Shown here piece by piece: positions 2,974 to 59,600 of a stretch of 64,000 nt of DNA (its first letter is position 1; the number at the start of each line of letters is the position of its first letter). The notes beneath the pieces were generated by a model. That model was given only the letters and a program-made list of their open reading frames with translations. It was not told the origin of the DNA and did not search any database. The stretch comes from Octopus sinensis. Its lineage: Eukaryota. The stretch spans positions 7,564,001 through 7,628,000 of the forward strand of contig NC_043012.1 in the NCBI RefSeq assembly GCF_006345805.1, given 5' to 3'. The position numbers and the translations under genes were made by a program.

Positions 2974-4980
2974 CTATAGAACCTCCTTGTACACAATGTT
3001 TTTTGTTTTTCGTTGTGGAAGGAATGCGAAAGCATCACTGTTGCTGCCGACACGCGAGCAGCCAACATAAAGCTGACCATGAGAGAAACATGGCTCTCCC
3101 AAATGTATTCCTGCCACAGACAGTGTTTGACCCTGCGCTTTGTTAATTGACATTGCGAAACATGACCTTACTGGGAACTGGGACCTCCGAAATATGAAAG
3201 GTAGGTCTGCTCCTGATGGGAAAAGATGCATCCTAGGTATGAGCACAACGTTGCCTCGACCGCACCCTGTGATAATGGTGGCCTCAATCAGATTGGGAGA
3301 TAAGGACTTAACGATCAAACGTGTGCCATTACATTGTTTTGGGGGAACCAAATTTCTAATGAGCATTATAGGGGCACCAACTTTAAGTTTGAGAATGCGT
3401 GGTGGTAGTCCGGGGGGCTCAAAGGAATTGAGTACCTCTATTGGATAATTGATGACGTCGTCTGGGTCAGGAGTTGTATCAATAGACTTATATACATAGA
3501 CATCCCCAGGAATGAGTTTTAGTATTTCCTCATTAATATGGTGAACAGTTTTATTCCTCGGGGCTAGAATAGCCCTTTGGCCAATCCAATCCATATTCTG
3601 ATAATTAGCTTGTAGATCTGGGAAGACTGCATCTCTGAGATCAGAAGGCGTCTTAACAATGGTACAAATGGAATTGATGGCAATATTACCATTTTCATCC
3701 CCTGGTATTTTGCCTTCGCCAAGTGCAAGAAGGGTGTGAGAAAATGCTGCTGATGTGATATCACGTCGCATATGAGCACGCATATTGGTGTGAAGTTTGA
3801 GAGTCTTCACCAGTGGCCACAATGTGGATGACTTAAGACACGCACTTACAGCATCAGCTCTAGTCCCTTTGGGAATAACGGGAAGTGTTTGTCGGAAGTC
3901 CCCTGAAAGAAGAAGTGTTATGCCTCCCATGGCAGCTGAAGAGTGTTTGATGTCTCTGAGAGATCTATCTAGTGCCTCAAGAGCACCTCTGTGGGCCATC
4001 GTGCATTCATCCCAAACGATAAGCTTGCATCGTCTGAAGACTTCTGCCTGATCGGAGCTGTTACTGATGTTGCAAGTTGGTGTCTCAGTCTTCGCTAAGT
4101 CAAGTGGGAGTTTGAAAGTAGAGTGAGCTGTCCTGCCGCCTGGCAATAAAGTAGGCGCAATTCCAGATGATGCCACAGCTAGGGCAATGCCTTGTGTTCG
4201 CCTAATCTCAGCCAATATTAATTTGTTGACAAAAGTTTTCCCAGTGCCCCCAGGAGCGTCCAGGAAAAAAATGTCTCCAGCTTTGGCCCGGACTGAATTA
4301 ACAACGGAGTTGTAAGCGAACTTCTGTTCTGGAATGAGCTTTGGCTCATTGTCGGCTATGTACTCGGCAAGCTCGTCAATATTAAAACATGTCTCACGCA
4401 GCAAATGTGAAGACAGAGTGTTTGTGCCTTCCCGGTTTGTTGAAGGTAGGGCATAGACCGGCAAGGCACTACCGCCCATATCAAGTACAGTATCTTCAAT
4501 TTCAAGCAGCGCCCTGTTGTAAATGAGGTCAGTGTACCCGACCTCCATTGATGGATGTAGCGATTGAGCGTGACGCAGGAAATCTTCAGACATATCATCT
4601 TTGTAGGTAATCCATAAAGAGGCGGGATTAGCCAAGTCACACCATAGTAATAGAATAGTGAAAAGCGATCTGATTTTTTTAGGAGATTTGAATGAAACAC
4701 CTTCTGCCATAGTGGCGCCCCATTGTGAATCATCCTCCAAAAGTCGACGCCGAAAACAGGCTTCACGGAAAGTATCACATAATACACCATCAACAGTTCT
4801 GATGTCTTGAAAACTTTGTGGGCCTAAAACCTCATGGAGGAGAAGGCGCAGGTGAAAACAGTCATGTTGGTTTGGAGGTACAGTGTAGACTCTTCCTAGA
4901 CAACTGTTAAACTTGACACCAGGATGTCCTTCAACATCCTGACCCGACTTCCTACGCACCCAATTGTTGTTTGACCACAC
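2974..4980 (-). CDS. Helitron PIF1-family (SF1B) helicase portion of RepHel, 668-aa open frame
   Basis: Walker A APGGTGKT, IVWDECTM, SGDFRQTLPV, AMSINKAQGQTL and HGQLYVGCSRV motifs, ending TKNIVYKEVL. The frame is a continuation of a frameshifted upstream Rep, so the ORF start is not a true start. Confidence 0.9.
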   Translation of the reverse strand: MWSNNNWVRRKSGQDVEGHPGVKFNSCLGRVYTVPPNQHDCFHLRLLLHEVLGPQSFQDIRTVDGVLCDTFREACFRRRLLEDDSQWGATMAEGVSFKSPKKIRSLFTILLLWCDLANPASLWITYKDDMSEDFLRHAQSLHPSMEVGYTDLIYNRALLEIEDTVLDMGGSALPVYALPSTNREGTNTLSSHLLRETCFNIDELAEYIADNEPKLIPEQKFAYNSVVNSVRAKAGDIFFLDAPGGTGKTFVNKLILAEIRRTQGIALAVASSGIAPTLLPGGRTAHSTFKLPLDLAKTETPTCNISNSSDQAEVFRRCKLIVWDECTMAHRGALEALDRSLRDIKHSSAAMGGITLLLSGDFRQTLPVIPKGTRADAVSACLKSSTLWPLVKTLKLHTNMRAHMRRDITSAAFSHTLLALGEGKIPGDENGNIAINSICTIVKTPSDLRDAVFPDLQANYQNMDWIGQRAILAPRNKTVHHINEEILKLIPGDVYVYKSIDTTPDPDDVINYPIEVLNSFEPPGLPPRILKLKVGAPIMLIRNLVPPKQCNGTRLIVKSLSPNLIEATIITGCGRGNVVLIPRMHLFPSGADLPFIFRRSQFPVRSCFAMSINKAQGQTLSVAGIHLGEPCFSHGQLYVGCSRVGSNSDAFAFLPQRKTKNIVYKEVL

Positions 4981-5964
4981 GTAGTAGGACGGGACCTGAG
5001 GGTATAAAAGTTTTTAGCAAATGTGTCAAGTTGGCAAAGCCTAAAGAAACCGGTCAAAGTTGTTTGTTTTGGATTTGCCGCCAAATCAGCTGCAGTCTGT
5101 TCAGTAAAGTAAGTTCGTTGGCCATTTTCCAAATGAACCGCTAGTTGTATGATGGCGGGGTGCCTTTGGTGAAGTGGAAACCCGAATATCCGCCAAAAAG
5201 CTTCACCACTGCTTATGTACCGACCTGCCATGTACTGTGACACCTCGTCCATGCTATTGTCCTTTTGAAGGCCAAACATGGCAGCGTCAGAACCCTTGTT
5301 AACATATTTACATATATACTTTATAGACTTGACTGAATGACAGAACTCCACATTTATGTGAGCGTTAAAAGTTTTCATCAGAAATGGACAGTACGGCACT
5401 ACCACCTATTATCCACTTGATGACCCCGTAACGTTATAGTGAATCCACCATTGTCAGGGTGCCTTCTTCTGCACAGTGGGTATCCGTCGCGGCCGGTCTG
5501 GGTCTCGTCCACGAACCTCTTTGGGTACCGTTTAGTGCACACGTGGTCTTTGTGGCATGAGGAGAACTTTTGAAAACCAGGACCGCACGGACCGTGTACC
5601 ATGTGTGCCTTCACAATGTCGTACAGCTGCCGGTCAACAGTTGGGCCCGGAATTTCTGCTGCAATGAGATCATCAAGAACTGTTGGGTCTATTTTGTTGA
5701 CCAACCAAAGCAAAATGTGCGCGTGTGGCAACCCTCTTTTCTGCCACTCAACAGTATACATGTGGCAGTTAACAGGCCCAAAAACCTGGCCTTTTTTATT
5801 AAAAGAATGAGCTTAGCCAGTTTCTGCCTGAAAACCCTTGCAATAATATCATGGCGATGACAGTACTGCTGCCCTGGGAGAAGTTCTCGCGTTACTTCAA
5901 CCCACTTTGGGTTACATGTAAAGGTAATGAATAAATCGGGTCGCCCATAATGCCGAACGTAAGT
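4981..5964 (-). pseudogene. Helitron Rep (HUH/Y2 endonuclease) domain, frameshifted and N-terminally truncated
   Basis: YVRHYGRPDLFITFTCNPKW (motif 1), VEWQKRGLPHAHILLW (HUH) and SIKYICKYVNKG (Y2) lie in different frames, with frameshifts near 5770, 5401 and 5005. Confidence 0.9.
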
Positions 5965-8739: not shown

Positions 8740-9074
8740 TCTTTTATTCTTTTATACGTTTCAGCTCTAAAGCTGTGGCTATACTAGAGTACGGTCAGCG
8801 AAAATATACGACAAAATATCAGTGCCTCGGGTAAAGTTCGGACTCAGAACCTCCGCATTTTTCGTCCGTGACTTACACAGCGAAGGTACTGTCTATAAGT
8901 ACGGAATGCTAACTGATTGTACCACCGGGACACATTATTTAAAATAGTTTGATTCGGCTGCTTGCGACTTAAAGTTTCGCGGGTCTCTGACAAAAGATAT
9001 GGAAGCAAAGCAAACTTTTAAATAATACATGTGTTGAATGACTTTTTCTTTCATTTGTCCAATCACTGGTAAAT

Positions 9075-9558
9075 ATATTCATATATATAAATATGTATAT
9101 ATATATACATACACACACATGTATTTATATACATGTATATATGGATATATATACACACAAATATATATACATAAACATATATAAACACACACACATATAT
9201 ATACATACACTCACACACACACATATATATATACATGCACACACACACATATATATATATACATATATATATATGCATATATATACATGCACATATACAT
9301 ACGTATATATGCTTATATATATGCATATATATATACATATATATATTCATATACATATATATATATTATGTATATATATATTTATGTATGTATATATATA
9401 TGTGTGTATATATATATGTATATATATATATATGTATATATATATATAAGTATATGTATATATATATATATATATATATGTGTGTATATATATATGTATA
9501 TATGTATATATATATATGTATATATATATATGTATATATATGTACATATATATATATG

Positions 9559-9592
<34 letters not shown>

Positions 9593-9608
9593 CATATATA
9601 CATATACT
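9075..9608. repeat. Compound (TA)n/(TACA)n microsatellite
   Basis: Low-complexity sequence; source of the YIYI pseudo-ORFs. Confidence 0.95.
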
Positions 9609-10010
9609 CAATAATAAATTACCGTTAATAAGATGGCTGTTTATAGCCATGACACATTTTTAGTCAAATTTCGAAATTTTTCAAAAATTTACAATCTATA
9701 TTAATGGCTCGGACCAAGTTGTCGAAAGAATGAGTAGAGTCTGGTAGCGAACCCGTGTCGTCGTCGTCATTTTTGTGCATTTGAGTAAAATAGCGAAATT
9801 TTGCACTTTGGGGCAGATATCGTCAAATTGATGTCATGATGGCTTGTGCGAAAAAATGCCTAAATTTTGCTTGAGAAATAAAATGCTCTCTCTTACCTAA
9901 TCAAAACCTGAAATGTCGGGGATTTAAAACAACGAATTGAATGAATAAGTTTTAGCAAATCAAAACAATTCGCATTGGAATGAAGAATTAGCAAACGCTA
10001 AAAAGATTAC

Positions 10011-10410
10011 AGGAGTGGCTGTGTAGTAAGTAGCTTGCTAACCAACCACATGGTTCCGGGTTCAGTCCCACTGCGTGGCATCTTGGACAAGTGTCTTCTG
10101 CTATAGCCCCGGGCCGACCAATGCCTTGTGAGTGGATTTGGTAGACGGAAACTGAAAGAAGCCTGTCGTATATATGTATATATATATGTGTATATGTGTG
10201 TGAGTGTTTGTGTATGTGTGTTTGTCCCCCTAGCATTGCTTGACAACCAATGCTGGTGTGTTTACGTCCCCGTCACTTAGCGGTTCGGCAAAAGAGACCG
10301 ATAGAATAAGTACTGGGCTTACAAAGAATAAGTCCCGGGGTCGATTTGCTCGACTAAAGGTGGTGCTCCAGCATGGCCGCAGTCAAATGACTGAAACAAG
10401 AAAAAAAGAG
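10011..10410 (+). mobile_element. tRNA-derived SINE family A, full length
   Basis: A-box-like TGGCTGTGTAG, B-box GGTTCAGTCCC, central microsatellite and tail CAGCATGGCCGCAGTCAAATGACTGAAACAAG. More than 12 related copies are in the window. Confidence 0.9.
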
Positions 10411-10674
10411 TAATTACCGTTAATAAACTGTCTGTGTATATCCATGAAACATTTCTCGTCAAATTTCGACATTTTTTGTCCATTTTTTGCCGAAAATTTA
10501 CGATTTTTGAAAAAATCGATCTTGATTAAAAATCGATAGTGATTAAATACCAATTTTTTTACAAAATTCCAAGTGCGAAAGTGACCGCATGGGCATAAGC
10601 CACACACATGGGTCAAGTTTCATCAAGGTTTCGGAAGAGTTAAAGTAACAAATTCACAAAGACACAAACTTGCC

Positions 10675-10740
<66 letters not shown>

Positions 10741-10741
<1 letters not shown>

Positions 10742-11041
10742 TCACTGTGACCGACCAGGCTATCAGATGTTGCTACACATCGCTGGTCACAATGCGCTTA
10801 GCATTGTTTTAGCCTTCGAATGACGTCACCCCGCAGCTACGCGAGCAGGCCAACAGAACAAAGAGTGAGAAAAAGTTGTGGCGAAAGAGTTCAGCAGGAA
10901 TCGCCACCACCCTTTGCCAGAGCCTCGTGGAGCTTTTAGGTGTTTTCGCTCAATAAACACGCACAACGCCCGGTCTGGGAATCGAAAGCGCGATCCTACG
11001 ACCGCGAGTCCGCTGCCCTAACCATTGGGCTATTGCGCCTC

Positions 11042-11042
<1 letters not shown>
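10741..11042 (-). mobile_element. tRNA-derived SINE family B, tail variant 1
   Basis: Head GGAGGCGCAATAGCCCAATGGTTAGGGCAGCGGACTCGCGG... with B box GGTTCGA-like, shared with copies at 17992, 21948 and 26953. Confidence 0.8.
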
Positions 11043-11102
<60 letters not shown>

Positions 11103-11149
11103 ATATGTATATATATATATATATGTATATATATATGTATATATATATG

Positions 11150-11201
<52 letters not shown>

Positions 11202-11204
11202 TAT

Positions 11205-11235
<31 letters not shown>

Positions 11236-11240
11236 GTATA

Positions 11241-11312
<72 letters not shown>

Positions 11313-11328
11313 TATATATATATATATA

Positions 11329-11381
<53 letters not shown>

Positions 11382-11385
11382 TATA
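11043..11385. repeat. (CA)n/(TA)n microsatellite
   Basis: Low-complexity sequence. Confidence 0.95.
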
Positions 11386-11750
11386 CGGCAAATAAGAAAA
11401 TGGAGAGGGTACAAAAACGACATACATCAGCCGGTAGACATTCTAGTATGTCTATTTATTCCAAAGTATTAGAAAGTATTAGAGGAATACATACACATGT
11501 AATAACTGTGTGTTACACACACGTGTACTAATATTATAGAAAAGAGCAAAAGAGCAGATTGACAGCAGGTGCTAGTTCCTTACGGCCGTTTCTGCGAAGA
11601 CGTAACGAAATCCTCCATGCCATCTCCATCTCCTCAGTGTTCTGTAGGGATGGGCAGGTAAAGCTTGGATGATGAATGTGCCTCTAGGTTTCTTCAGAGG
11701 GTCTAAGTGGTTGGGAGGGTTAATACATATAAGAATATAAGAATATATAT

Positions 11751-11805
<55 letters not shown>

Positions 11806-11844
11806 TATATATATATGTATGTATTATGTATATATGTACATATA

Positions 11845-11890
<46 letters not shown>

Positions 11891-11996
11891 CTCACACACA
11901 CATATATATAATATATATATGTATGTATGTATATATATATATATAATATATATATGTGTGTGTGTGTGGTGTGTATATGTATATATATATATATAT

Positions 11997-12148
<152 letters not shown>

Positions 12149-12180
12149 CTAGCAGGGTACCCGGCATTGCTCGGGAAGTG
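12149..12180 (-). mobile_element. Helitron 3' terminus; extent of the element unknown
   Basis: CCCGAGCAATGCCGGG hairpin plus CTGCTAG|T, nearly identical to the termini at 1529 and 2156. Confidence 0.75.
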
Positions 12181-12809
12181 AAGGACTCGGCCGATGGACA
12201 ATTTGTTGCAAAAAGTAAATTCTGCATGATCTTATTCTTTCAAAAATCAGCTTTTGCATATTTCGTAACTAGGACGCAAAATTCAATGAAGTATAACTTT
12301 TGGTAAACATCAACAAGCAATTCTCAACCAATGGCATTTTGTCAATGACCCTATTTTTTTCTCTTTTCTTTGTTTATTTTGATCATGAAAAGCATTCATT
12401 TGAAGATTGTGTTTATTTTTTTACGGGACCATCCAACATAAAACTGTCATGCTCTTTCAGTCGCGTCCAGTTTCTCCCAAAGTTTTGCTCAAGGATTTGT
12501 TGATGTACACTGAGAAGCGTAGGATCTGGAAAAGTTAGGGAAAGCGGGAGGGGGGGCTCTCTTGAAGTAAAAGAGGCTGCAAGTATCTTCACCATTGCTA
12601 CATCTCGATGAGCAGTCAATATTTGACCGACCGTTACCAATGGAAGACTCTCTACCAATCTCGACTAACATTAGCTTATTGTCCATATATCTGCGACTGT
12701 ATTGCTGCTCCTGCGCTACTGGTTCCGTTGCTGCCACTGCTGCTGCTGCACAGACAAGCATCCCAGACTGACATCACACCTACAGCATTGTACAGTTACT
12801 TCCACAAAC

Positions 12810-13212
12810 AGGAGTGGCTGTGTGGTAAGTAGCTTGTTTACCAGCCACATGGTTCAGGGTTCAGTCCTACTGCGTGGCACTTTGGGCAAGTGTCTTCTGC
12901 TATAGCCTCGGGCCGACCAAATCCTTGTGAGTGGATTTGGTAGACGGAAACTGAAAGAAGCCCGTCGTATATATGTATATATATATATATGCGTGTGTGT
13001 GTTTGTGTGTCTGTGTTTGCCCCTCTAGCATTGCTTGACAACCAATGCTGGTGTGTTTATGTCCCCGTTACTTAGCAGTTCAGCAAAAGTGACCGATAGA
13101 ATAAGTACTGGGCTTACAAAAGAATAAGTCCCGGGGTCGAGTTGCTCGATTAAAGGCGTTGCTCCAGCATGGCCGCAGTCAAATGACTGAAACAAGTAAA
13201 AGAGTAAAGAGA
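12810..13212 (+). mobile_element. SINE family A
   Basis: Same head, body and tail as 10011-10410. Confidence 0.9.
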
Positions 13213-13745
13213 GAATCTTGGATTCAGAAATATATATATCTGATTGGATCTCCTGGGTCTCTCCATTCGGCATTCCAGAAATCCAAAGGAGTCAGGGGTC
13301 CCGTTAGCGGCCTGCGGAACTTGAAGCTGTTCCGAACCGAACCAAACTGTTTTAAATAATACATGTAACTCCTATTAAATGAGTTGTGTGCCCTTTTTTT
13401 TCGTTTGTCCAGTCACTTGCATATACATGTGTGAGTATGTGTGTGTGAGTTCGTCTGCGTGTGTGTGTGTATACGTGTGTGTGTGTGTGTGTGCTGTATA
13501 CTATATTTTCCGGTATACAAGTCGAATGTTTTAGACCAAACACTTATAGCCAAAAAGCAGGCAGGTCAAACTTATACACCAAGGTGACTTTGGAGGACCA
13601 AAAAATTCTTTGTAAAATGCTGTAGGATCTGGAAAAATGCTGACCATATATATTTGAATATTTATACTATATGTTTATACTACATGTTTACACTCTATAC
13701 TATGTCGACTTGTATGCTAGAAAATACGGTATTTATATGTATGTA

Positions 13746-13840
13746 TGTAGGTAGTAAGGTAGGTAGGTAGGTAGGTAGGTAGGTAGGTAGGTAGGTAGGT
13801 AGGTAGGTAGGTAGGTAGGTAGGTAGGTAGGTAGGTAGGT
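13746..13840. repeat. (TAGG)n microsatellite
   Basis: Read directly. Confidence 0.95.
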
Positions 13841-14173
13841 GTATGTGTATGTGTGTATATATGCATGTTTGTATACGTACATGTTAGAATGTAAATGTGT
13901 GCACGTATATGTATTTATGTATGTATATATATATATAAATATTTGTATGTATATATATATATGCAAATATGTATAAGCATATATATAAATATATGTATGT
14001 ATATATGTATATATATATATATATATATTAGAAGAAATGAGGTAATCAGAAGATCGGATGGTTTATATTTACAGATATTTATTTATATATTACATTTTTT
14101 ACATATATATCATATCACTTAGATCAGTAGCGCTTTCTCCCATTCTAGTGGGGTTTTCATATATATAATATAT

Positions 14174-14215
<42 letters not shown>

Positions 14216-14336
14216 TATATATACATACATGTATATACATATACATTTGTTTATGTATATGTGCGTGTGTATATAATGTCTGTGTGTGTTGTGCACACGT
14301 GTAATTTGTGAACGTGACTGTATAAATTTAAGTGTG

Positions 14337-14385
<49 letters not shown>

Positions 14386-14448
14386 CAGATTCAATCCTTT
14401 CACCACACACACACACACACACACAATACAAAGTCCACCTTCGCTCCA

Positions 14449-14488
<40 letters not shown>

Positions 14489-14596
14489 TCAATATAGGGT
14501 GGCAAAAAATTTCGTAGAATTTTTCTTAGAATTTTTTGCCACCAGCGGCCTAGTGTGAAAAAATTAAATAGTCAAAGACCATTTATAAAATCAAAC

Positions 14597-14768
14597 ATCA
14601 ACAATCAAGGAACGGCCATAATAGGCCATTCACCCACTAGAAATAACAGCCAAAGCTTCAACCGCAAAACAATATCAATTCCGGAATTGATATTGTTTTG
14701 CGGTTGAAGCTTTGGCTGTTATTTCTAGTGGGTGAATGGCCTATTATGGCCGTTCCTTGATTGTTGAT
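14597..14768. repeat. Perfect 172-bp palindrome (2 x 86 bp, no spacer)
   Basis: Arms checked base by base; centre ...AATTCC|GGAATT... between 14682 and 14683. Confidence 0.97.
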
Positions 14769-15077
14769 ATATATATATATATATATACACGAAAAGTGAA
14801 TAATGTCCAAAAGCCTGACTTCCCAAACCAGCCTGACAGCCTGTCTGCCTGCACGGCCTGTTCGATTGGATCGGCGGCTGCAGCAAAGCAAAGCTGTTTG
14901 AACAAGACTCAACAAGTATGGTCAGGCCAGTTCTACCGGTGCCGCACAATAACATCACCTTTTTATCGATTTCCGCCCACACACACACCTATCCATTTTT
15001 TTCCCTCTTTTTTCTGTTATTTATTTATTTACTTATTTTTCACAATGAATCAATTTAGGAACATTTAATTCGTTGTT

Positions 15078-15392
15078 TGTTGTTTATATATGTGTGTGTG
15101 CGTGCATGTGTGTATTTATGAATGTAGATGTGTATCTCTGTATGTGTGTGTGTGTGTCTCTGTATGAGTGTGTGTATGTACATGTATATATGTATGTGCG
15201 TATATGTTTATTTTCATGTATGTATGCATTTTTGAGCGCGCGTGTGTGTGTGTGTGTGTGTGTCTACGTATGTGTGTATCTATTAATATTTGTATGTGGG
15301 TAAGTTTCTATATGTGTATGTCTGTATTCATGTTTGTGCATGCATGTGTGTGTGTTTATGTGCGTGTGTATGCATGTATGTATGTATGTATG

Positions 15393-15426
<34 letters not shown>

Positions 15427-15694
15427 TGTATGTATGTATGTATGTGTGTATGTGTGTATGTGTGTGTATGTATGTGTATGTATGTGTGTATGTATGTATG
15501 TATGTATGTATGTGTGTATGTGTGTGTATGTATGTGTATGTATGTATGCATGTATGTATGTATGCATGTATGTATGTATGTATGTATGTATGTATGTATG
15601 TATGTATGCATGCATGTATGTATGTATGTGTATGTATGTATGCATGCATGTATGTATGTATGTATGCATGTATGTATGCATGCATGTATGTATG

Positions 15695-15725
<31 letters not shown>

Positions 15726-15868
15726 GTATGTATGTATGTATGCATGTATGTATGCATGCATGTATGATGTATGTATGTGTGCACGTAGTATGTAAGTATG
15801 TATGTAATATGTATTGTATGTATGTAGTAAGTATGTATGTTGTATGCATGTATGTATGCATGCATGTA

Positions 15869-15901
<33 letters not shown>

Positions 15902-16059
15902 GGTAGTTTATGTAAGTATGTTGATGTATGTATGGGTGTGCACGTATGTATGTACGTATGTATGTAAGTATGTATGTATGTATGTATGTAAGTATGTATG
16001 TATGTATGCATGTATGTATGCATGCATGTATGTATGTATGTATGTATTATGTATGTATG

Positions 16060-16090
<31 letters not shown>

Positions 16091-16187
16091 GTATGTATGT
16101 ATGTATGTGTGCACGTATGTATGTAAGTATGTATGTAAGTATGTATGTATGTATGCATGTATGTATGCATGCATGTATGTATGTATG

Positions 16188-16218
<31 letters not shown>

Positions 16219-16830
16219 GTATGTATGTATGTATGTGTGCACGTATGTATGTAAGTATGTATGTAAGTATGTATGTATGTATGTATGTAAGTATGTATGT
16301 ATGTATGCATGTATGTATGCATGCATGTATGTATGTATGTATGTATGTATGTATGTATGTGTGCACGTATGTATGTAAGTATGTATGTAAGTATGTATGT
16401 ATGTATGTATGTAAGTATGTATGTATGTATGCATGTATGTATGCATGCATGTATGTATGTATGTATGTATGTATGTATGTATGTATGTATGTACGTATGT
16501 ATATATGTATGTATGCATGTATGTATGTATGTACGTATGTATGTATGTATGTATGTGCGTGTGTATGTATGTATGTGTATGTATGTATGCATGCATGTAT
16601 GTATGTATGTATGTATGTATGTATGCATGTATGTATGTATGCATGTATAAATGTATGTATGTATGTGTATGTACGTATGTATGTATGTATGTGTGTATGT
16701 ATGTATTTATGTATGCATGTATGAATGTATGTATGCATGTATGTATGTATGTATGTATGCATAAATGTATGTATGTATGTGTATGTATGTATGTGCATAT
16801 GTATGAATTTATGTGTGCGTGTGTTGCATT
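15078..16830. repeat. About 1.7-kb (TGTA)n satellite with variant units
   Basis: Low-complexity sequence running into the assembly gap. Confidence 0.95.
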
Positions 16831-16930
16831 NNNNNNNNNNNNNNNNNNNNNNNNNNNNNNNNNNNNNNNNNNNNNNNNNNNNNNNNNNNNNNNNNNNNNN
16901 NNNNNNNNNNNNNNNNNNNNNNNNNNNNNN
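16831..16930. other. Assembly gap (100 N)
   Basis: Run of N. Confidence 1.
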
Positions 16931-17117
16931 TGACAACCGATGCTGGTGTGTTTACGTCCCCGTAACCTAGCGGTTCGGCAAAAAGAGACCGATCGAATAA
17001 GTACTGGGCTTACAAAGAATGAGTCCCGGGGTCGAGTTGCTCGACTAAAAGGCGGTGCTCCAGCATGGCCGCAGTCAAAATGACTGAAACAAGTAAAAGA
17101 AAGAAAAGAAAGAAAGA
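16931..17117 (+). mobile_element. SINE family A, 3' half (5' half lost in the gap)
   Basis: Matches the family A body and tail. Confidence 0.85.
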
Positions 17118-34267: not shown

Positions 34268-34295
34268 TCAAAATTTATCTGAATATTTCCGCACA
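34268..34295 (-). CDS. HNRNPK: hnRNP K last coding exon: (S)VRKYSDKF*
   Basis: tttttgttttcag acceptor in phase 2; resembles the vertebrate C-terminus SVKQYSGKFF. Confidence 0.88.
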
Positions 34296-36460: not shown

Positions 36461-37189
36461 TGTTATCCTGCAATTCATGTAACTTAGTATATTTCATACT
36501 TAGGTTTCCCATCAATGTGCACCCACACTGACAGTAGCTATTGTAGATAAATTTTTTTAAAATTTCAGCTATGTACGTATTTATACTTCCTGACTTAAAT
36601 ATTTCCTGAAGACCTAAATTAGAATTTATCTCCAGTTTCAACACAAACCTAACACATAGGGCAACAAATCACAAGACATTTAATCAACACGTGTATTAAT
36701 TATTAACTTTGTATGTCAAATCAATTATTAGAATATAATAATTTATACCAAGGACGCATGGAAACTTTCCTAAAATTGAAATCTAAAATTTAGGAAGAAT
36801 TCTAAACCGATTCCAACAAGTTGCTTCAGTTTTCACCGTAATTTCGCTCTGTAAACATGTCATGCACATTTAAACATTTCATTATTTTACATTTAAAAAT
36901 ATTAAATAAAAATTAGTTTGTAACATGCCAATCACAGTACCAGTTCTGGATAGTGGTTATAACGATAGTAGTAGTAGTAGTTATAATAATAATAGTAGCA
37001 AACAGTAGTAATAGTAGTAGTAATGACAATAGTAGCAGCAGCAGAAACAGTAGCGGAGCTGAAGGTTAGCAAAGCAGCAGTGGTGGGCAGCCATCAACAA
37101 GGGATCCAGGAGGGGGTCAATCGAATGAGTGGCAGTTGTGAGGGAAGGGAGAAGAGGATAGGGATGAGCAAGAGCTGGTGTTGCTGCTA

Positions 37190-37279
37190 CTTACATCCAT
37201 GGTTCAGGAAGATAATGATTCATTGTTCTCACACTACACAACAACAAAATTCATTAGTCTTCCAGACCATGGGTGCCAA
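37190..37279 (-). ncRNA. MIR7: pri/pre-miR-7 hairpin (5p mature about 37264-37241, UGGAAGACUAAUGAAUUUUGUUGU; 3p arm about 37227-37203)
   Basis: miR-7 5' end and seed UGGAAGAC and a complementary 3p arm. Basal stem CCAUGGU/ACCAUGG, basal UG at -14/-13, apical UGUG, and CNNC (CAGC) about 17 nt downstream. It lies in the last intron of hnRNP K, as in human and Drosophila. Confidence 0.92.
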
Positions 37280-38212
37280 AGGTTAGTTACAAGCCAAATC
37301 CCATCACCAATGTCTCATGCACATCATCGACAATAGCCACCAGATGCCACCCAATGCTAACCAAGAAAGCCTTAACCACACCCATTAAACTGGTACCATC
37401 AAAATTTTAAACCTAAAGCTACTTTGTGAAAAAGTAATGGCTACAACAAGAACATTAATCTTTAGAGGAAACACTCCCTTACTTCACAATGTAACACAAT
37501 AACACACATTTAGATTTTAAGAAATAAATTCGATTTATACATCTGTTAATATTTTTCTTTATTTAAAAGACATTTAAACTAAGAATTTAGATTCCAAAAG
37601 TTAACAGACTTTCTAACTGTATAAAAAAAAGATATCAATAAAACGAAGCTTTGTTTTTTTCCTTACATTGGATAAATGAGAATTTGTAATATTTGTTACC
37701 ACTCTTATCTTAGTGTTTAGTTTTTCTAAAGGTGTTCAAATTGAACCTACACTTCTCTCTCTGGCATATATTATACATTTTGCTAGCTTACTAAATAAAA
37801 ACTATACTAATTTATGCTGTGTAAATCCTAAATGGACCAACAATTAGATAAAGATGCAATTATCAAATTAACCAAATAGCAAATTCCTTTTGATATAATG
37901 TATCAATAATTAAAGCTTTCCTACGAGAGGATGGGAAATCAAGTGGCAACCATTCTATAGAATTAAGTCTTCGTGCACTGGATTTACTTTTAGTAACAGT
38001 AGTAAAAAGTTTTAGTGTCACTAAAAAAACAGGTTAGTACATGTGAGTAATGGAAGATGAAGGTACAGATAGCTAATACAATTTCTAATCAAGGCATTAG
38101 TGTCTCTTTTGTTTACAACCAACAGAATGCAATGCAATGAGGAATAGAAGAGAGGAAAGAGGAGAAACAAAGAGGAGAAAAAGACCAAGTCTTTACATGA
38201 CATTCAACTAAC

Positions 38213-38382
38213 CTGCTCTGCAAGAGAAACTGTGCAGCATCAATTTGTTCTTGAGTTCCTGTGATAGTAATTATCCGATCACTGGAACCAGGAAGGGCTT
38301 CATCTATAACCACTTGGGCTCCAGACTGGCGCCGCACATCAGTAATGCGAGTTCCACATCTGCCAATAATGGCACCAGCAAG
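38213..38382 (-). CDS. HNRNPK: hnRNP K exon, KH3: [56 protein letters not shown]
   Basis: KH fold with GxxG loop; AG/GT boundaries; phase 0 to 2. Confidence 0.95.
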
Positions 38383-56700: not shown

Positions 56701-57514
56701 TCATTCTTTTAGATCTAATAAAATACACCCAGGCGCAATATCCTTATACACACACACATATATATATATATGTGTGTATATATAGGGCCTATGGTGGGTG
56801 TGGGTGATTACGTGAAGCCACGGAGTGAAATAAAGGCGACAGGAACCTAGCTGGCCATGTGCTAGTGGGAACTATCAGCGTGTAATATCTGTTAATGATA
56901 TTATATATATATATATGGCGATGGTAAAGGATCGCCTCTAAATATATATATATACACACACACACACACACTTGAAATAATTTCCCGAGCGTATATAGTG
57001 AAATTGATATAATTACACAGAAAACCTGGATCAATGGCCAATGCCGTGCGGTTTTGCAGCACAGATAGAAGAAACTAGGCACACATAATACATATATTAA
57101 CGATATTCCTTTTCTTGCCTCCTGTCAACAAACATACATATATACGTTCCTTTTGCAAATGTGAAATGAAGGGAAATTAAAAGGAAAATAAGGAGAACCA
57201 ACGGGTGGGGAAAACAAAAAGTATAGAGAGAGATATTTAACACATGCAATGGCGATGATTATTAAGGAAATATTGCAATCATCGGCAATATAACATCTAT
57301 AATACACAGAATGAAAATTATATATACATACATTTATTTATATGGTAGTATTTAGCTTGGGCGTACCACTACATGGGAATATATTTATATATATTATATA
57401 TACAATATGCACATAGGTAGATTTCCTAACAAGATCGGGGCAAACCCTGAGATGCATGAAAATACTTCAAAAGCGGGCGGCGTTTTAAGAACGAATATAA
57501 CAGTAAATACAATT

Positions 57515-57950
57515 GTTGGGTTTATATATATATATATATATATAAATACATATATACACACACAAATATATATATACACACACGTATACATACACAAATA
57601 TATATGTACATATATACACACGTATACATACACAAATACATATATACACACGAATACATACACATATATATACACGTATTCATACAAATATATATATATA
57701 CATATATACACATATATATACACACGTATACATACACAAATATATATATATATACATATATACACACGTATACATACACAAATATATATATATATACATA
57801 TATACACGTATTCATACACATATATATATATACATATATACACGTATTCATACACAAATATATATATACATATATACACGTATTCATACACAAATATATA
57901 TATATATATACACACGTATACATACACAAATATATATATATATATATATG
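57515..57950. repeat. Compound (TA/CA) microsatellite with a recurring ~30-bp unit CACGTAT(A/T)CATACACAAATATATA
   Basis: Read directly. Confidence 0.9.
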
Positions 57951-58242
57951 TGAGGGTACAACAAAAATGCGTTTCAAGAAAGATTTTCCCCCCTGAAAAG
58001 TCCCTGGTTTTTTACCCCCCGAATGTGTGAGTGTCTATATGTGAAATGCATGTATGGAAAATGTAGAATTAAATTTTCCTCGCTATACATTCATCTTTAC
58101 ACCCAATTGTTAAGAAATACAATAAACTGCAAAGCCACACACACACATATATATATATATATGTATATATATATATGTTTAATATGTATTTATGTATGCT
58201 TTAAATATACACATTATTGTTCAACATATATATATATACACA

Positions 58243-58286
<44 letters not shown>

Positions 58287-58879
58287 CCTCATTACCTTTC
58301 TAAAAGGAATCAATTTTCCACTGAAGAATGGAAAAAAAAGAAATCAGAAGAGACAGAAAAAGGAAGCTGGCGCCTTAATTTTTCTACAAAGCTCCTCAGA
58401 AATGAGGAAGAATGGATAAAGAAAGCGACAGGAGGGCAAAAATTAAAGAAAAAAAAAGGAACAAGCTACAGACTTCAGACAGTTGTAGGAATTATAAGAT
58501 ATATTCCAATATATATATATATATAGCTTGCGTCTATGTATGTGTATATATCTTGATGAAATGTCAGAGAAAAGATGGGGAAAGAAAAAACTGGTAAGAG
58601 AAACATATAGAGGGGAAAAATGAAGTGAAATGAGATGGGGAAGACTTGGGCTGGTTACATATTTCGTATATTTTAAAGATCGCTATAGGAATTATGGACA
58701 TTATATATATATATATATATATATAGCTTGGGTATTGGGTATATATATCCTGTGTCTGTGCATGTATGTATATCTTGAGGAAGTGTGAGAGAGAGAAATA
58801 GAGAAGAAGGTAAATGAAATGAAATGGAGAAAATACTGGCTTACATTCTTCAACGTGTTTCACACAGACCGATGTAGGA

Positions 58880-59600
58880 AATATGGATATGGATATATAT
58901 ATATATATATATGTATTCTGAGGATATATATAGCCTGTATCTGTGAGTGTATGTAAATTGATGTGAGATATAAATCCCTTAAAATCCTTTTAAAATGTTT
59001 TAGCTAGAAGGCCGCCGCGGCCATGCTGGGGCAATACCACCGCAGAGAAAAGAGGGGGGAAAAATATGGATATGTATATATATATATATATATTCTAAGG
59101 ATATATATATAGCCTGTATCTGAGTGTATGTAAATTGATGTGAGATATAAATCCCTTAAAATCCTTTTAAAATGTTTTAGGCCGAAGGCCGCCGCGGCCA
59201 TGCTGGGGCAATACTACCGCAGAGAAAAGAGGGGGGGAAATATGGATATGGATATGTATATATATATATATATGTATTCTAAGGATATATATATATAGCC
59301 TGTATCTGAGTGTATGCAATTTGATGAGATATAAATCCCTTAAAATCCTTTTAAAATGTTTTAGACCGAAGGCCGCGGCCATGCTGGAGCACCACCGCAG
59401 AGAAAAAAACAGGTAAGAGAAATATATATATATATATATATTGTAAGGATATATATATAGCCTGTATCTGTGAGTGTATGCAATTTGATGAGATATAAAT
59501 CCCTTAAAATCCTTAAAAGTGTTTTAGCAAGAAGGCCGCCGCGGCCATGCTGGGGCACACCACCGCTGAGAAAAGAGGGGGGAAAAAAACAGGTAAGAGA
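58880..59600. repeat. Tandem array of four ~165-185-bp units containing a SINE-tail fragment
   Basis: GCCTGTATCTG recurs at 58933, 59112, 59298 and 59460; GCGGCCATGCTGG recurs at 59017, 59194, 59375 and 59541. Confidence 0.9.

What the first reader, a model, noticed from the sequence alone, without database searches (positions are those of the whole stretch)
37191..37264. miR-7 hairpin that is also a complete in-frame hnRNP K cassette exon (splice-site-overlapping miRNA)
Seen in sequence (minus strand): CUAAU at 37257-37253 matches the branch-point consensus, with the branch A 20 nt before the AG. It is followed by the U-rich miR-7 3' half, UGUAG| in the apical loop (37235-37234), a 39-nt segment (37233-37195) and a strong AT|GTAAGT donor in the 3' basal stem. 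The segment is phase 2 to 2, exactly matching the flanking exons, and begins T GTG AGA, almost the same as the true last exon (T GTG CGG). Inclusion gives ...LLQS-SVRTMNHYLPEPW-I-VRKYSDKF*. If the donor is skipped it is an alternative terminal exon, SVRTMNHYLPEPWM* (TAA 37193-37191). The branch point exists only because this miR-7 has A where the canonical sequence has G (UAAUG vs UAGUG). Established: miR-7 sits in an HNRNPK/bancal intron in human and fly, vertebrate hnRNP K has alternative C-termini, and splicing inside a hairpin competes with Microprocessor. Inference: a switch in which each transcript yields either miR-7 or a distinct hnRNP K isoform.
Basis: partly seen in the sequence, partly recalled or inferred. 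Interest (0 to 1): 0.9.

Follow-up and report, generated by a model that had tools for sequence, protein, structure and literature searches.

The report
Octopus miR-7 hairpin, not an exon
This is the octopus copy of the ancient microRNA miR-7, sitting as usual in the last intron of the hnRNP K gene; the splice-site-like motifs inside it are real, but nothing shows they are used as an exon and ordinary hairpin constraints explain them.

Summary
The hairpin (37278-37191) is the genome's only miR-7 locus. It lies in the last intron of hnRNP K, as in oyster and chiton.

The cassette-exon/switch idea found no support. None of the annotated or assembled hnRNP K proteins retrieved from five cephalopod species contains the peptide. 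Three searches of a 5.8-billion-protein collection with cassette-bearing queries found nothing. Two assembled mRNAs join exon 38213 directly to 34295.

AG, GUAAGU, length and frame are kept in Argonauta and Sepia, but so is almost every other hairpin base. No third-codon position of the 13 changed between Octopus and Sepia, against 31 of 37 differences at third positions in the neighbouring coding exon. The few changes alter the peptide. That is RNA-structure constraint, not coding constraint.

The donor GU closes the basal stem, as in chiton. G11A is one half of a compensated G-C to A-U pair.

Genuine residue: the coleoid miR-7 sequence differs from the bilaterian one, and about 80 nt of conserved upstream flank carries UAACUAAC. 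Rare or tissue-restricted splicing is not excluded.

The parts
37191..37278 (-). pri/pre-miR-7 hairpin, the coleoid form of Mir-7
   Evidence: Rfam RF00053 over the full model length, 41 bits, E 4e-7. MFE -39.5 kcal/mol, z -3.2. 8 of 33 pairs covary across Octopus, Argonauta, Sepia, oyster and chiton. It is the only such locus found in the 2.72-Gb genome.
37241..37264 (-). mature miR-7-5p, UGGAAGACUAAUGAAUUUUGUUGU (ends inferred)
   Evidence: The seed and first 10 nt are identical to canonical miR-7. The arm is identical in Argonauta and Sepia. Ovu-Mir-7 is annotated with target site GTCTTCCA and reported as neuronally expressed in PMC9699675 supplements.
37204..37225 (-). inferred miR-7-3p (star) arm, CAAUGAAUCAUUAUCUUCCUGA; this is most of the putative exon
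   Evidence: It pairs with the 5p arm in the MFE and consensus folds. The ends are inferred from a 2-nt overhang, not measured.
37253..37257 (-).
   Evidence: Seen in sequence. It is base-paired in the stem. Its A11 pairs with a U, where oyster and chiton have G-C (columns 37/77).
37234..37235 (-). AG in the apical loop (putative 3' splice site)
   Evidence: Present in Octopus, Argonauta and Sepia. The chiton loop also has AG at the equivalent place. Pyrimidine content upstream is 0.55, against 0.45-1.00 for the gene's real acceptors and 0.90 for the two flanking ones.
37195..37233 (-). 39-nt open, phase-2-compatible segment (putative cassette); no evidence of use
   Evidence: Frame confirmed. 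Absent from all retrieved proteins and mRNA contigs. 0 of 13 third-codon positions changed between Octopus and Sepia.
37189..37194 (-). GUAAGU, 5'-splice-site-like hexamer at the basal junction of the hairpin
   Evidence: The only GTRAGT in the intron. Its G and U, with the preceding U, pair with GCA of the 5' flank in the consensus fold. The chiton has UGU at the same columns (columns 15-17/97-99). Invariant in the three coleoid lineages.
37277..37278 (-). basal UG at -14/-13 from the inferred 5p Drosha cut
   Evidence: Counted in the sequence. The motif rule comes from my own knowledge of pri-miRNA determinants, so this is an inference.
37183..37186 (-). CAGC, a CNNC-type motif about 18 nt after the inferred 3p cut
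   Evidence: Counted in the sequence. Conserved in Argonauta and Sepia. The assignment as a motif is an inference.
37279..37356 (-). conserved upstream flank containing UAACUAAC (37289-37282)
   Evidence: Block 37356-37178 is 87.6% identical to Sepia, against 78% for the KH3 coding exon. Alignment. It forms a hairpin in Octopus but not clearly in Sepia.
38213..38382 (-). hnRNP K exon encoding KH3 (...FLLQS, ends in phase 2; donor gttagt)
   Evidence: It shows the coding-type substitution pattern: 31 of 37 differences from Sepia are at third positions.
34268..34295 (-). coding part of the last hnRNP K exon ((S)VRKYSDKF*); the exon continues as 3'UTR to about 33166
   Evidence: The proteins end with this sequence.

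Best explanation
The feature is the single-copy, intron-hosted Mir-7 gene of an octopus (probably Octopus sinensis). It sits in the last intron of hnRNP K, a position kept across bilaterians. I infer that the hairpin is cropped from the intron by Drosha/DGCR8 while the host intron is spliced normally from 38213 to 34295, so one transcript can give both the mRNA and the miRNA.

The splice-like motifs are parts of the pri-miRNA:
- The U-rich tract and CUAAU are the mature 5p arm.
- UGUAG lies in the UG-rich apical loop.
- The 39-nt segment is the 3p arm plus lower stem.
- The GU of GUAAGU closes the basal stem, and AAGU begins an invariant 3' flank that carries a CNNC-type motif.

Their conservation follows from conservation of the hairpin. 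Shown: identity, single copy, synteny, covariation, canonical junction in assembled mRNAs, absence of the peptide from the collections searched, and the non-coding substitution pattern. Inferred: the exact Drosha cut sites, the motif assignments (UG, CNNC, apical UGU), and that splicing into the hairpin is negligible in vivo.
For: Identity and position:
- Full-length mir-7 match and stable fold.
- Only one miR-7-like locus found in the genome.
- Oyster and chiton carry a canonical mir-7 in the same hnRNP K intron, at 58 and 56 bits. The same position is reported for Ciona, human and fly in PMC6829576.
- 8 of 33 pairs covary, including G-C to A-U at miRNA position 11.
- Ovu-Mir-7 is annotated and neuronally expressed (PMC9699675 supplements).

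Against exon use:
- Exon 38213 is joined directly to 34295 in two mRNA contigs.
- All retrieved hnRNP K proteins from five cephalopods end ...LLQ[SN]SVRK[YF]S[DE]K[FY].
- No product holds SVRTMNHYLPEPW in three searches covering candidate lengths 49-735 aa.
- 0 of 13 third-codon positions in the segment changed between Octopus and Sepia, against 31 of about 57 in the KH3 exon. The only changes are non-synonymous and fall in the loop or at an unpaired stem position.
- The donor GU is paired in the basal stem, and the chiton has the same GU there.
Against: - A perfect GTAAGT with an in-frame open AG...GT segment arises in only about 1% of shuffles, and it is the only GTRAGT in the intron.
- AG, GUAAGU, the 39-nt length and the open frame all persist in Sepia even though two loop bases next to the AG changed.
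- A near-perfect branch-point sequence, UAACUAAC, is invariant just upstream.
- The AAGU part of the hexamer and the 80-nt upstream block have no demonstrated pri-miRNA role.
- The negative transcript evidence comes from assembled contigs and gene models, which drop rare isoforms. No raw reads could be examined.
Confidence: 0.8

Rival explanations
1. The hairpin is a splice-site-overlapping miRNA whose 3p half is a genuine 39-nt cassette exon of hnRNP K. Spliceosome and Microprocessor compete, so each transcript yields either miR-7 or an hnRNP K isoform with a 13-residue insert.
For: All the sequence elements are present, in phase and open. The donor hexamer is as good as the gene's real donors, and the acceptor's pyrimidine content is within their range. 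The elements are retained in Argonauta and Sepia. The chance estimate is about 1%. The mechanism has precedent in vertebrate SO-miRNAs such as miR-34b, whose branch point lies in the hairpin (PMC3794580).
Against: No isoform, fragment or mRNA contig contains the insert. There is no coding signature: 0 of 13 synonymous-type positions changed while all three observed changes alter the peptide. Branch point, pyrimidine tract and donor are all base-paired in a -39.5 kcal/mol hairpin. G11A is explained by pair covariation. For SO-miRNA exons in coding genes, Drosha or SF3B1 knockdown did not change exon inclusion (PMC6097652), so a 'switch' is not the expected behaviour even for real SO-miRNA exons.
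Confidence: 0.06
2. The splice-like signals (UAACUAAC, loop AG, GUAAGU) are functional snRNP or splicing-factor binding sites, but not to make a protein isoform. They would act as a decoy exon-definition unit, or as a U1 site at the base of the hairpin, tuning Microprocessor access or the timing of host-intron removal. Few or no stable exon-included mRNAs would result.
For: GUAAGU, its flank and the upstream block with UAACUAAC are invariant over the Octopus-Sepia split and better conserved than the neighbouring coding exon. These elements are coleoid-specific: oyster and chiton lack them. This model is compatible with the absence of an included isoform.
Against: There is no direct evidence for any factor binding. 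Conserved pri-miRNA flanks are common and need no splicing explanation. The GU is accounted for by the basal stem. Only three coleoid lineages were sampled.
Confidence: 0.1
3. Alternative terminal exon. The AG at 37234 is used, the donor is skipped, and the transcript ends ...SVRTMNHYLPEPWM* with downstream polyadenylation.
For: TAA at 37193-37191 is in frame.
Against: No AATAAA or ATTAAA until 36684, about 510 nt downstream. No protein ends in ...EPWM. In Argonauta the same reading would give ...EPWL* (GGT TGT AAG -> TGG TTG TAA), again a non-synonymous change.
Confidence: 0.02

Closest known systems
Mir-7 hosted in the last intron of HNRNPK / bancal (human MIR7-1, Drosophila mir-7, Ciona miR-7)
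   Same: Same miRNA family (identical seed and first 10 nt), same host gene, same last intron between the KH3 exon and the short terminal exon, same orientation (PMC6829576). Neuronal expression is reported in octopus (PMC9699675 supplement).
   Different: The coleoid mature arm has A for G at position 11 and one extra A. There are matching changes on the 3p arm and a rebuilt lower stem. The hairpin therefore scores below Rfam's gathering threshold (41-43 bits), while oyster and chiton score 56-58.
Splice-site-overlapping (SO) miRNAs, e.g. miR-34b, miR-205, miR-133a-2 (Mattioli et al. 2013, PMC3794580; Pianigiani et al. 2018, PMC6097652)
   Same: A pri-miRNA hairpin containing branch-point-, AG- and GU-type signals. 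In miR-34b the branch point lies inside the hairpin.
   Different: SO-miRNAs are defined on splice sites that are used in known transcripts. Here no transcript uses them. No known SO-miRNA has both sites of one exon inside a single hairpin, as far as the papers read here show.
Mirtrons
   Same: The hairpin is delimited by splice-type dinucleotides.
   Different: The geometry is the opposite. A mirtron hairpin is the intron itself, with GU at its 5' end and AG at its 3' end. Here AG is in the loop and GU at the 3' base, and the hairpin has a full lower stem of about 11-12 bp, suited to Drosha.

Membership tests
Mir-7 (Rfam RF00053 / MirGeneDB Mir-7) | Covariance-model match at or above the curated gathering score | tested here: not met
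   41 bits against a gathering score of 51.8, full-length, E 4e-7. Argonauta scores 42.8 and Sepia 40.7. Oyster (58) and chiton (56.4) pass. The shortfall comes from lineage-specific changes, not from a partial match.
Mir-7 (Rfam RF00053 / MirGeneDB Mir-7) | miR-7 seed (GGAAGAC) on the 5p arm of a stable hairpin of about 60-90 nt | tested here: met
   UGGAAGACUA is identical to canonical miR-7. Hairpin -39.5 kcal/mol, z -3.2. 8 of 33 pairs covary.
Mir-7 (Rfam RF00053 / MirGeneDB Mir-7) | Orthologous genomic position (last intron of hnRNP K, sense strand) | tested here: met
   Exon map from the mRNA contigs. Oyster and chiton mir-7 lie in the same intron. Literature support.
Mir-7 (Rfam RF00053 / MirGeneDB Mir-7) | Mature small RNAs with defined 5' ends from both arms | not testable with these tools
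   No read data are available here. Indirect support only: Ovu-Mir-7 is listed as expressed in PMC9699675 supplements, and this is the only miR-7-like locus found in the genome.
Splice-site-overlapping miRNA / SO-miRNA exon | Hairpin overlaps a splice site that is used in a real transcript | tested here: not met
   No protein or mRNA contig uses AG 37234 or GU 37194. Caveat: only assembled data were searched, not raw reads.
Splice-site-overlapping miRNA / SO-miRNA exon | Splice-signal sequences (branch point, AG, GURAGU) present within the hairpin | tested here: met
   CUAAU, UAG and GUAAGU at the stated coordinates.
Protein-coding cassette exon | Coding-type conservation (synonymous changes exceed non-synonymous) among orthologues | tested here: not met
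   0 of 13 third positions changed between Octopus and Sepia. The three changes seen are at codon positions 1-2. In the neighbouring KH3 exon 31 of 37 differences are at third positions.
Protein-coding cassette exon | Length a multiple of 3, open in the host phase, kept in relatives | tested here: met
   39 nt and open in Octopus, Argonauta and Sepia. This is confounded by near-invariance of the hairpin, and the chiton hairpin also has an open in-frame AG...GT segment.
Mirtron | Hairpin ends coincide with the 5'ss (GU) and 3'ss (AG) of a short intron | tested here: not met
   AG is in the loop and GU at the 3' base. The hairpin lies about 930 nt from the upstream exon and about 2.9 kb from the downstream exon.

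The most novel reading that the evidence does not exclude
Coleoid cephalopods rebuilt the otherwise near-invariant pri-miR-7. They changed the mature sequence and added a complete exon-definition unit: UAACUAAC/CUAAU, a loop AG, and GUAAGU at the basal junction. All of this has been kept since the octopus-cuttlefish split. The unit would be used either as a rare, tissue-restricted SO-miRNA exon of hnRNP K or as a decoy that couples U1/U2 binding to Microprocessor access. That would link production of a neuronal miRNA to splicing of an RNA-binding-protein host gene.
Probability: 0.1. Interest if true: 0.7.

Novelty: already known. Interest (0 to 1): 0.25.

Why it matters
As it stands, this is the expected Mir-7/hnRNP K arrangement, already annotated in octopus, so it adds little.

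Two side results may interest miRNA specialists. First, the mature miR-7 sequence, usually treated as invariant in bilaterians, carries a compensated G11A change and a 1-nt insertion in Octopus, Argonauta and Sepia. Oyster and chiton keep the canonical form. Second, about 80 nt of upstream flank are conserved better than the neighbouring coding exon.

If the splice-like signals were shown to be used, it would be the first SO-miRNA exon outside vertebrates, and the first with both splice sites inside one hairpin. The present evidence gives that a low probability.

Tried and rejected
- The Rfam scan of the whole window at gathering threshold found nothing. The hairpin appears only with E-value thresholds.
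- A search for a second, canonical miR-7 locus in the genome found none within 2 mismatches or with a gapped pattern. The divergent hairpin is therefore not a pseudogene copy of a canonical gene.
- A scan of JGI metagenome contigs for the coleoid miR-7 arm, aimed at squid sequences, gave 0 hits. No squid or Nautilus genomic sequence could be reached. O. bimaculoides, O. vulgaris and one S. pharaonis genome record were not returned by exact-protein look-ups.
- A full-text search for the variant mature sequence gave 0 papers.
- Second miRNA hairpin upstream (37279-37362): it folds well in Octopus but the fold is not kept in Sepia. I rejected it as a conserved hairpin and keep it as an unexplained conserved sequence.
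- Mirtron reading: rejected on geometry.
- Alternative terminal exon: no nearby poly(A) signal.
- MaxEnt-type splice scores could not be computed offline. I used hexamer matches and pyrimidine fractions against the gene's own 13 introns instead.

Full report
**1. The observation**

On the minus strand the region reads ...ggcacccatggtcTGGAAGACTAATGAATTTTGTTGTtgtgtag|TGTGAGAACAATGAATCATTATCTTCCTGAACCATGGAT|gtaagtagcagcaacacc.
- CUAAU at 37257-37253
- AG at 37235-37234
- a 39-nt segment at 37233-37195
- GTAAGT at 37194-37189
- TAA at 37193-37191

The upstream exon ends ...CAG AGC AG|gttagt at 38213, which is phase 2. The terminal exon begins T GTG CGG AAA TAT TCA GAT AAA TTT TGA at 34295. Inclusion would therefore give SVRTMNHYLPEPW-I-VRKYSDKF*, exactly as stated.

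**2. What the hairpin is**

Rfam finds nothing in the window at gathering thresholds. A local E-value scan gives a full-length mir-7 match at 37278-37191(-): 41 bits against a gathering score of 51.8, E 4e-7. The sequence folds into a long hairpin of -39.5 kcal/mol, z -3.2.

The window is contig 16, positions 7,564,001-7,628,000, of a 2.72-Gb, 13,516-contig assembly. The encoded hnRNP K is identical to NCBI records for Octopus sinensis and O. bimaculoides.

This is the only miR-7-like locus found in that genome. A covariance search, a 2-mismatch search for the canonical mature sequence and a gapped pattern all return only this site.

The mature arm is UGGAAGACUAAUGAAUUUUGUUGU. Relative to canonical UGGAAGACUAGUGAUUUUGUUGU it has G11A plus one inserted A.

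The supplements of Zolotarov et al. 2022 (PMC9699675) list Mir-7 as broadly expressed in O. vulgaris neuronal tissues and suckers. They use the target site GTCTTCCA for Ovu-Mir-7. The gene is therefore already annotated and expressed.

**3. The host gene**

Two assembled mRNA contigs from public RNA-seq runs (L003, L004) align to the window as 14 blocks for L003 and 13 for L004, from 59.9 kb to 33.2 kb on the minus strand. Both join 38213 directly to 34295. The product is hnRNP K with three KH domains. The hairpin lies in the last intron, which is 3917 nt long.

I fetched the orthologous genes of an oyster (L012) and a chiton (L013). Both carry a canonical mir-7 in the same intron, at 58 and 56 bits. 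The same position is described for Ciona, human and Drosophila (PMC6829576).

**4. Is the 39-nt segment used as an exon?**

- Every hnRNP K protein retrieved for O. bimaculoides (five isoforms), O. sinensis, O. vulgaris, Argonauta hians, Sepia (Acanthosepion) pharaonis and several run-assembled transcripts ends ...FLLQ[SN]SVRK[YF]S[DE]K[FY]. The isoforms differ at the N-terminus, at an AQSLLQ micro-exon and at a Gly-rich exon, never after KH3.
- I queried the 5.8-billion-cluster protein collection three times with sequences that contain the hypothetical insert: 420, 89 and 179 aa, together covering candidate lengths 49-735 aa. No hit contains any part of SVRTMNHYLPEPW.
- In the genome the reading frame around the segment is only 19 codons long. 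A hit would therefore have needed splicing, which makes the search specific.
- The terminal-exon variant lacks a poly(A) signal for about 510 nt.

The limitation is that these are assemblies and gene models, which lose rare isoforms. A major isoform in any sampled tissue is excluded; a rare one is not.

**5. Conservation**

I obtained genomic orthologues from Argonauta hians (L005), Sepia pharaonis (L009, with a near-identical L010) and a second octopod (L006).

The AG, GUAAGU, the 39-nt length and the open frame are all retained. However, the hairpin is almost invariant as a whole. The only differences are:
- UG>CA in the loop of Sepia, directly after the AG
- A>U at an unpaired lower-stem position in Argonauta
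- C>U at a lower-stem position in Sepia, which keeps the pair as G-U (columns 19/95)

The first two lie inside the 39-nt segment and both change the hypothetical peptide (V>Q; I>F). None of the 13 third-codon positions changed.

In the adjacent KH3 coding exon, Octopus and Sepia differ at 37 of 170 positions. Of these, 31 are third positions, and they cause only 5 amino-acid changes. At that third-position rate, zero changes in 13 would be very unlikely (about 4e-5). The constraint on the segment therefore acts on the RNA, not on the protein.

The resemblance of the segment's start to the true last exon (T GTG AGA vs T GTG CGG) is not kept in Sepia, which has T CAG AGA vs C GTG CGG.

**6. Each 'splice signal' has a hairpin explanation**

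- The consensus fold over five species has 33 pairs, 8 of them with compensatory changes.
- The G11A change that creates CUAAU is paired with a C>U change on the 3p arm: G-C in oyster and chiton, A-U in coleoids.
- The U preceding the donor plus its G and U pair with GCA of the 5' flank as the last three pairs of the lower stem. The chiton has the same GCA/UGU pairs there.
- Counting from the inferred Drosha cut, there is a UG at -14/-13 (37278-37277) and a CAGC about 18 nt after the 3p cut (37186-37183). The loop begins with UGUG.
- These match the known basal UG, CNNC and apical UGU determinants of pri-miRNAs. That assignment rests on my own knowledge and is an inference.
- The branch point, pyrimidine tract and donor GU are all base-paired in the hairpin, which disfavours spliceosome access.

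**7. How unusual is it by chance?**

GTAAGT at 37194 is the only GTRAGT in the intron, where about 2 are expected from composition. Three other intronic GTAAGT decoys occur elsewhere in the gene.

Of 5000 dinucleotide shuffles of the 131-nt region, 0.9% contain GTAAGT plus an in-frame open AG...GT segment. With a donor matching at least 5 of 6 the figure is 9.5%. Among 353 real windows from the rest of the intron, 61 (17%) meet the looser criterion.

The chiton's canonical hairpin also offers gtgaag|TGAATC...CAA|gtctgt, which is 36 nt, in frame and open. The arrangement is uncommon but within reach of coincidence for a single conserved hairpin.

**8. What remains unexplained**

- The AAGU of the hexamer and the invariant 3' flank.
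- An upstream block of about 80 nt (37356-37279). Together with the hairpin it is 87.6% identical to Sepia, against 78% for the coding exon.
- That block contains UAACUAAC (37289-37282), a near-perfect branch-point sequence 49 nt before the loop AG. It forms a hairpin in Octopus but not convincingly in Sepia.
- These elements are absent from oyster and chiton.

They keep alive a low-probability reading in which snRNPs bind here as a decoy exon or as a U1/U2-dependent modulator of Microprocessor.

**9. Comparison with known systems**

The object is a member of Mir-7 by seed, structure, covariation and synteny, though it falls below Rfam's curated score because of lineage-specific changes.

It resembles SO-miRNAs only in carrying splice-type motifs. 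The defining feature of that class, use of the overlapped site in a transcript (PMC3794580), was tested on assembled data and not met. Even for bona fide SO-miRNA exons in coding genes, altering Drosha or SF3B1 did not change exon inclusion (PMC6097652). That weakens the 'switch' inference in general.

It is not a mirtron, because the AG and GU are in the opposite geometry.

**10. Verdict**

The identification of miR-7 and hnRNP K is correct. The cassette-exon/switch interpretation is not supported and is probably wrong: I put about 6% on the exon model and about 10% on any splicing-factor function of the motifs.

The feature itself is already known. The coleoid-specific change of the mature miR-7 sequence and the conserved upstream element are modest but real side observations.

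Noticed in passing
window 37279-37356 (-): About 80 nt directly upstream of the mir-7 hairpin are conserved in Octopus, Argonauta and Sepia, better than the neighbouring coding exon. The near-invariant 3' half contains UAACUAAC (37289-37282), a near-perfect branch-point consensus. It folds into a hairpin in Octopus but not clearly in Sepia, and is absent from oyster and chiton.
   Followed up: partly
window 37241-37264 (-); L005 15229-15251; L009 24655-24677: The mature miR-7 of Octopus, Argonauta and Sepia differs from the canonical bilaterian sequence: G11A, compensated on the 3p arm, plus one inserted A. Oyster and chiton keep the canonical form. The variant string was not found in any searchable paper text.
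   Followed up: partly
window 48403 / 45820 (-): The hnRNP K isoform starting MDSKEDFSTGIMK (mRNA contig L003 and the NCBI X2 models) joins exon 1 to an acceptor that reads ttaattg|ATTTTTCAACAG. This is a GT...TG intron with a non-canonical 3' site, 12 nt upstream of the canonical cag|GCATAATG used by the other isoform.
   Followed up: partly
window 2974-5812 (-): Long open frames (679, 169 and 137 aa) with PIF1/Helitron-type helicase motifs such as DAPGGTGKT. Probably a Helitron-like transposon remnant downstream of hnRNP K.
   Followed up: no
window ~16,800-16,900 and much of 9,000-17,000, 57,400-59,600: An assembly gap (a run of N, read as X in the ORF translations) lies inside long TG/CA-rich and TATG-type microsatellite arrays. 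Simple repeats fill much of the window's non-genic sequence.
   Followed up: no
window 36913-37065 (-): A CTA/CTG trinucleotide-rich tract of about 150 nt lies some 130 nt downstream of the hairpin. The Argonauta alignment block extends to 36762, but Sepia does not align there.
   Followed up: no
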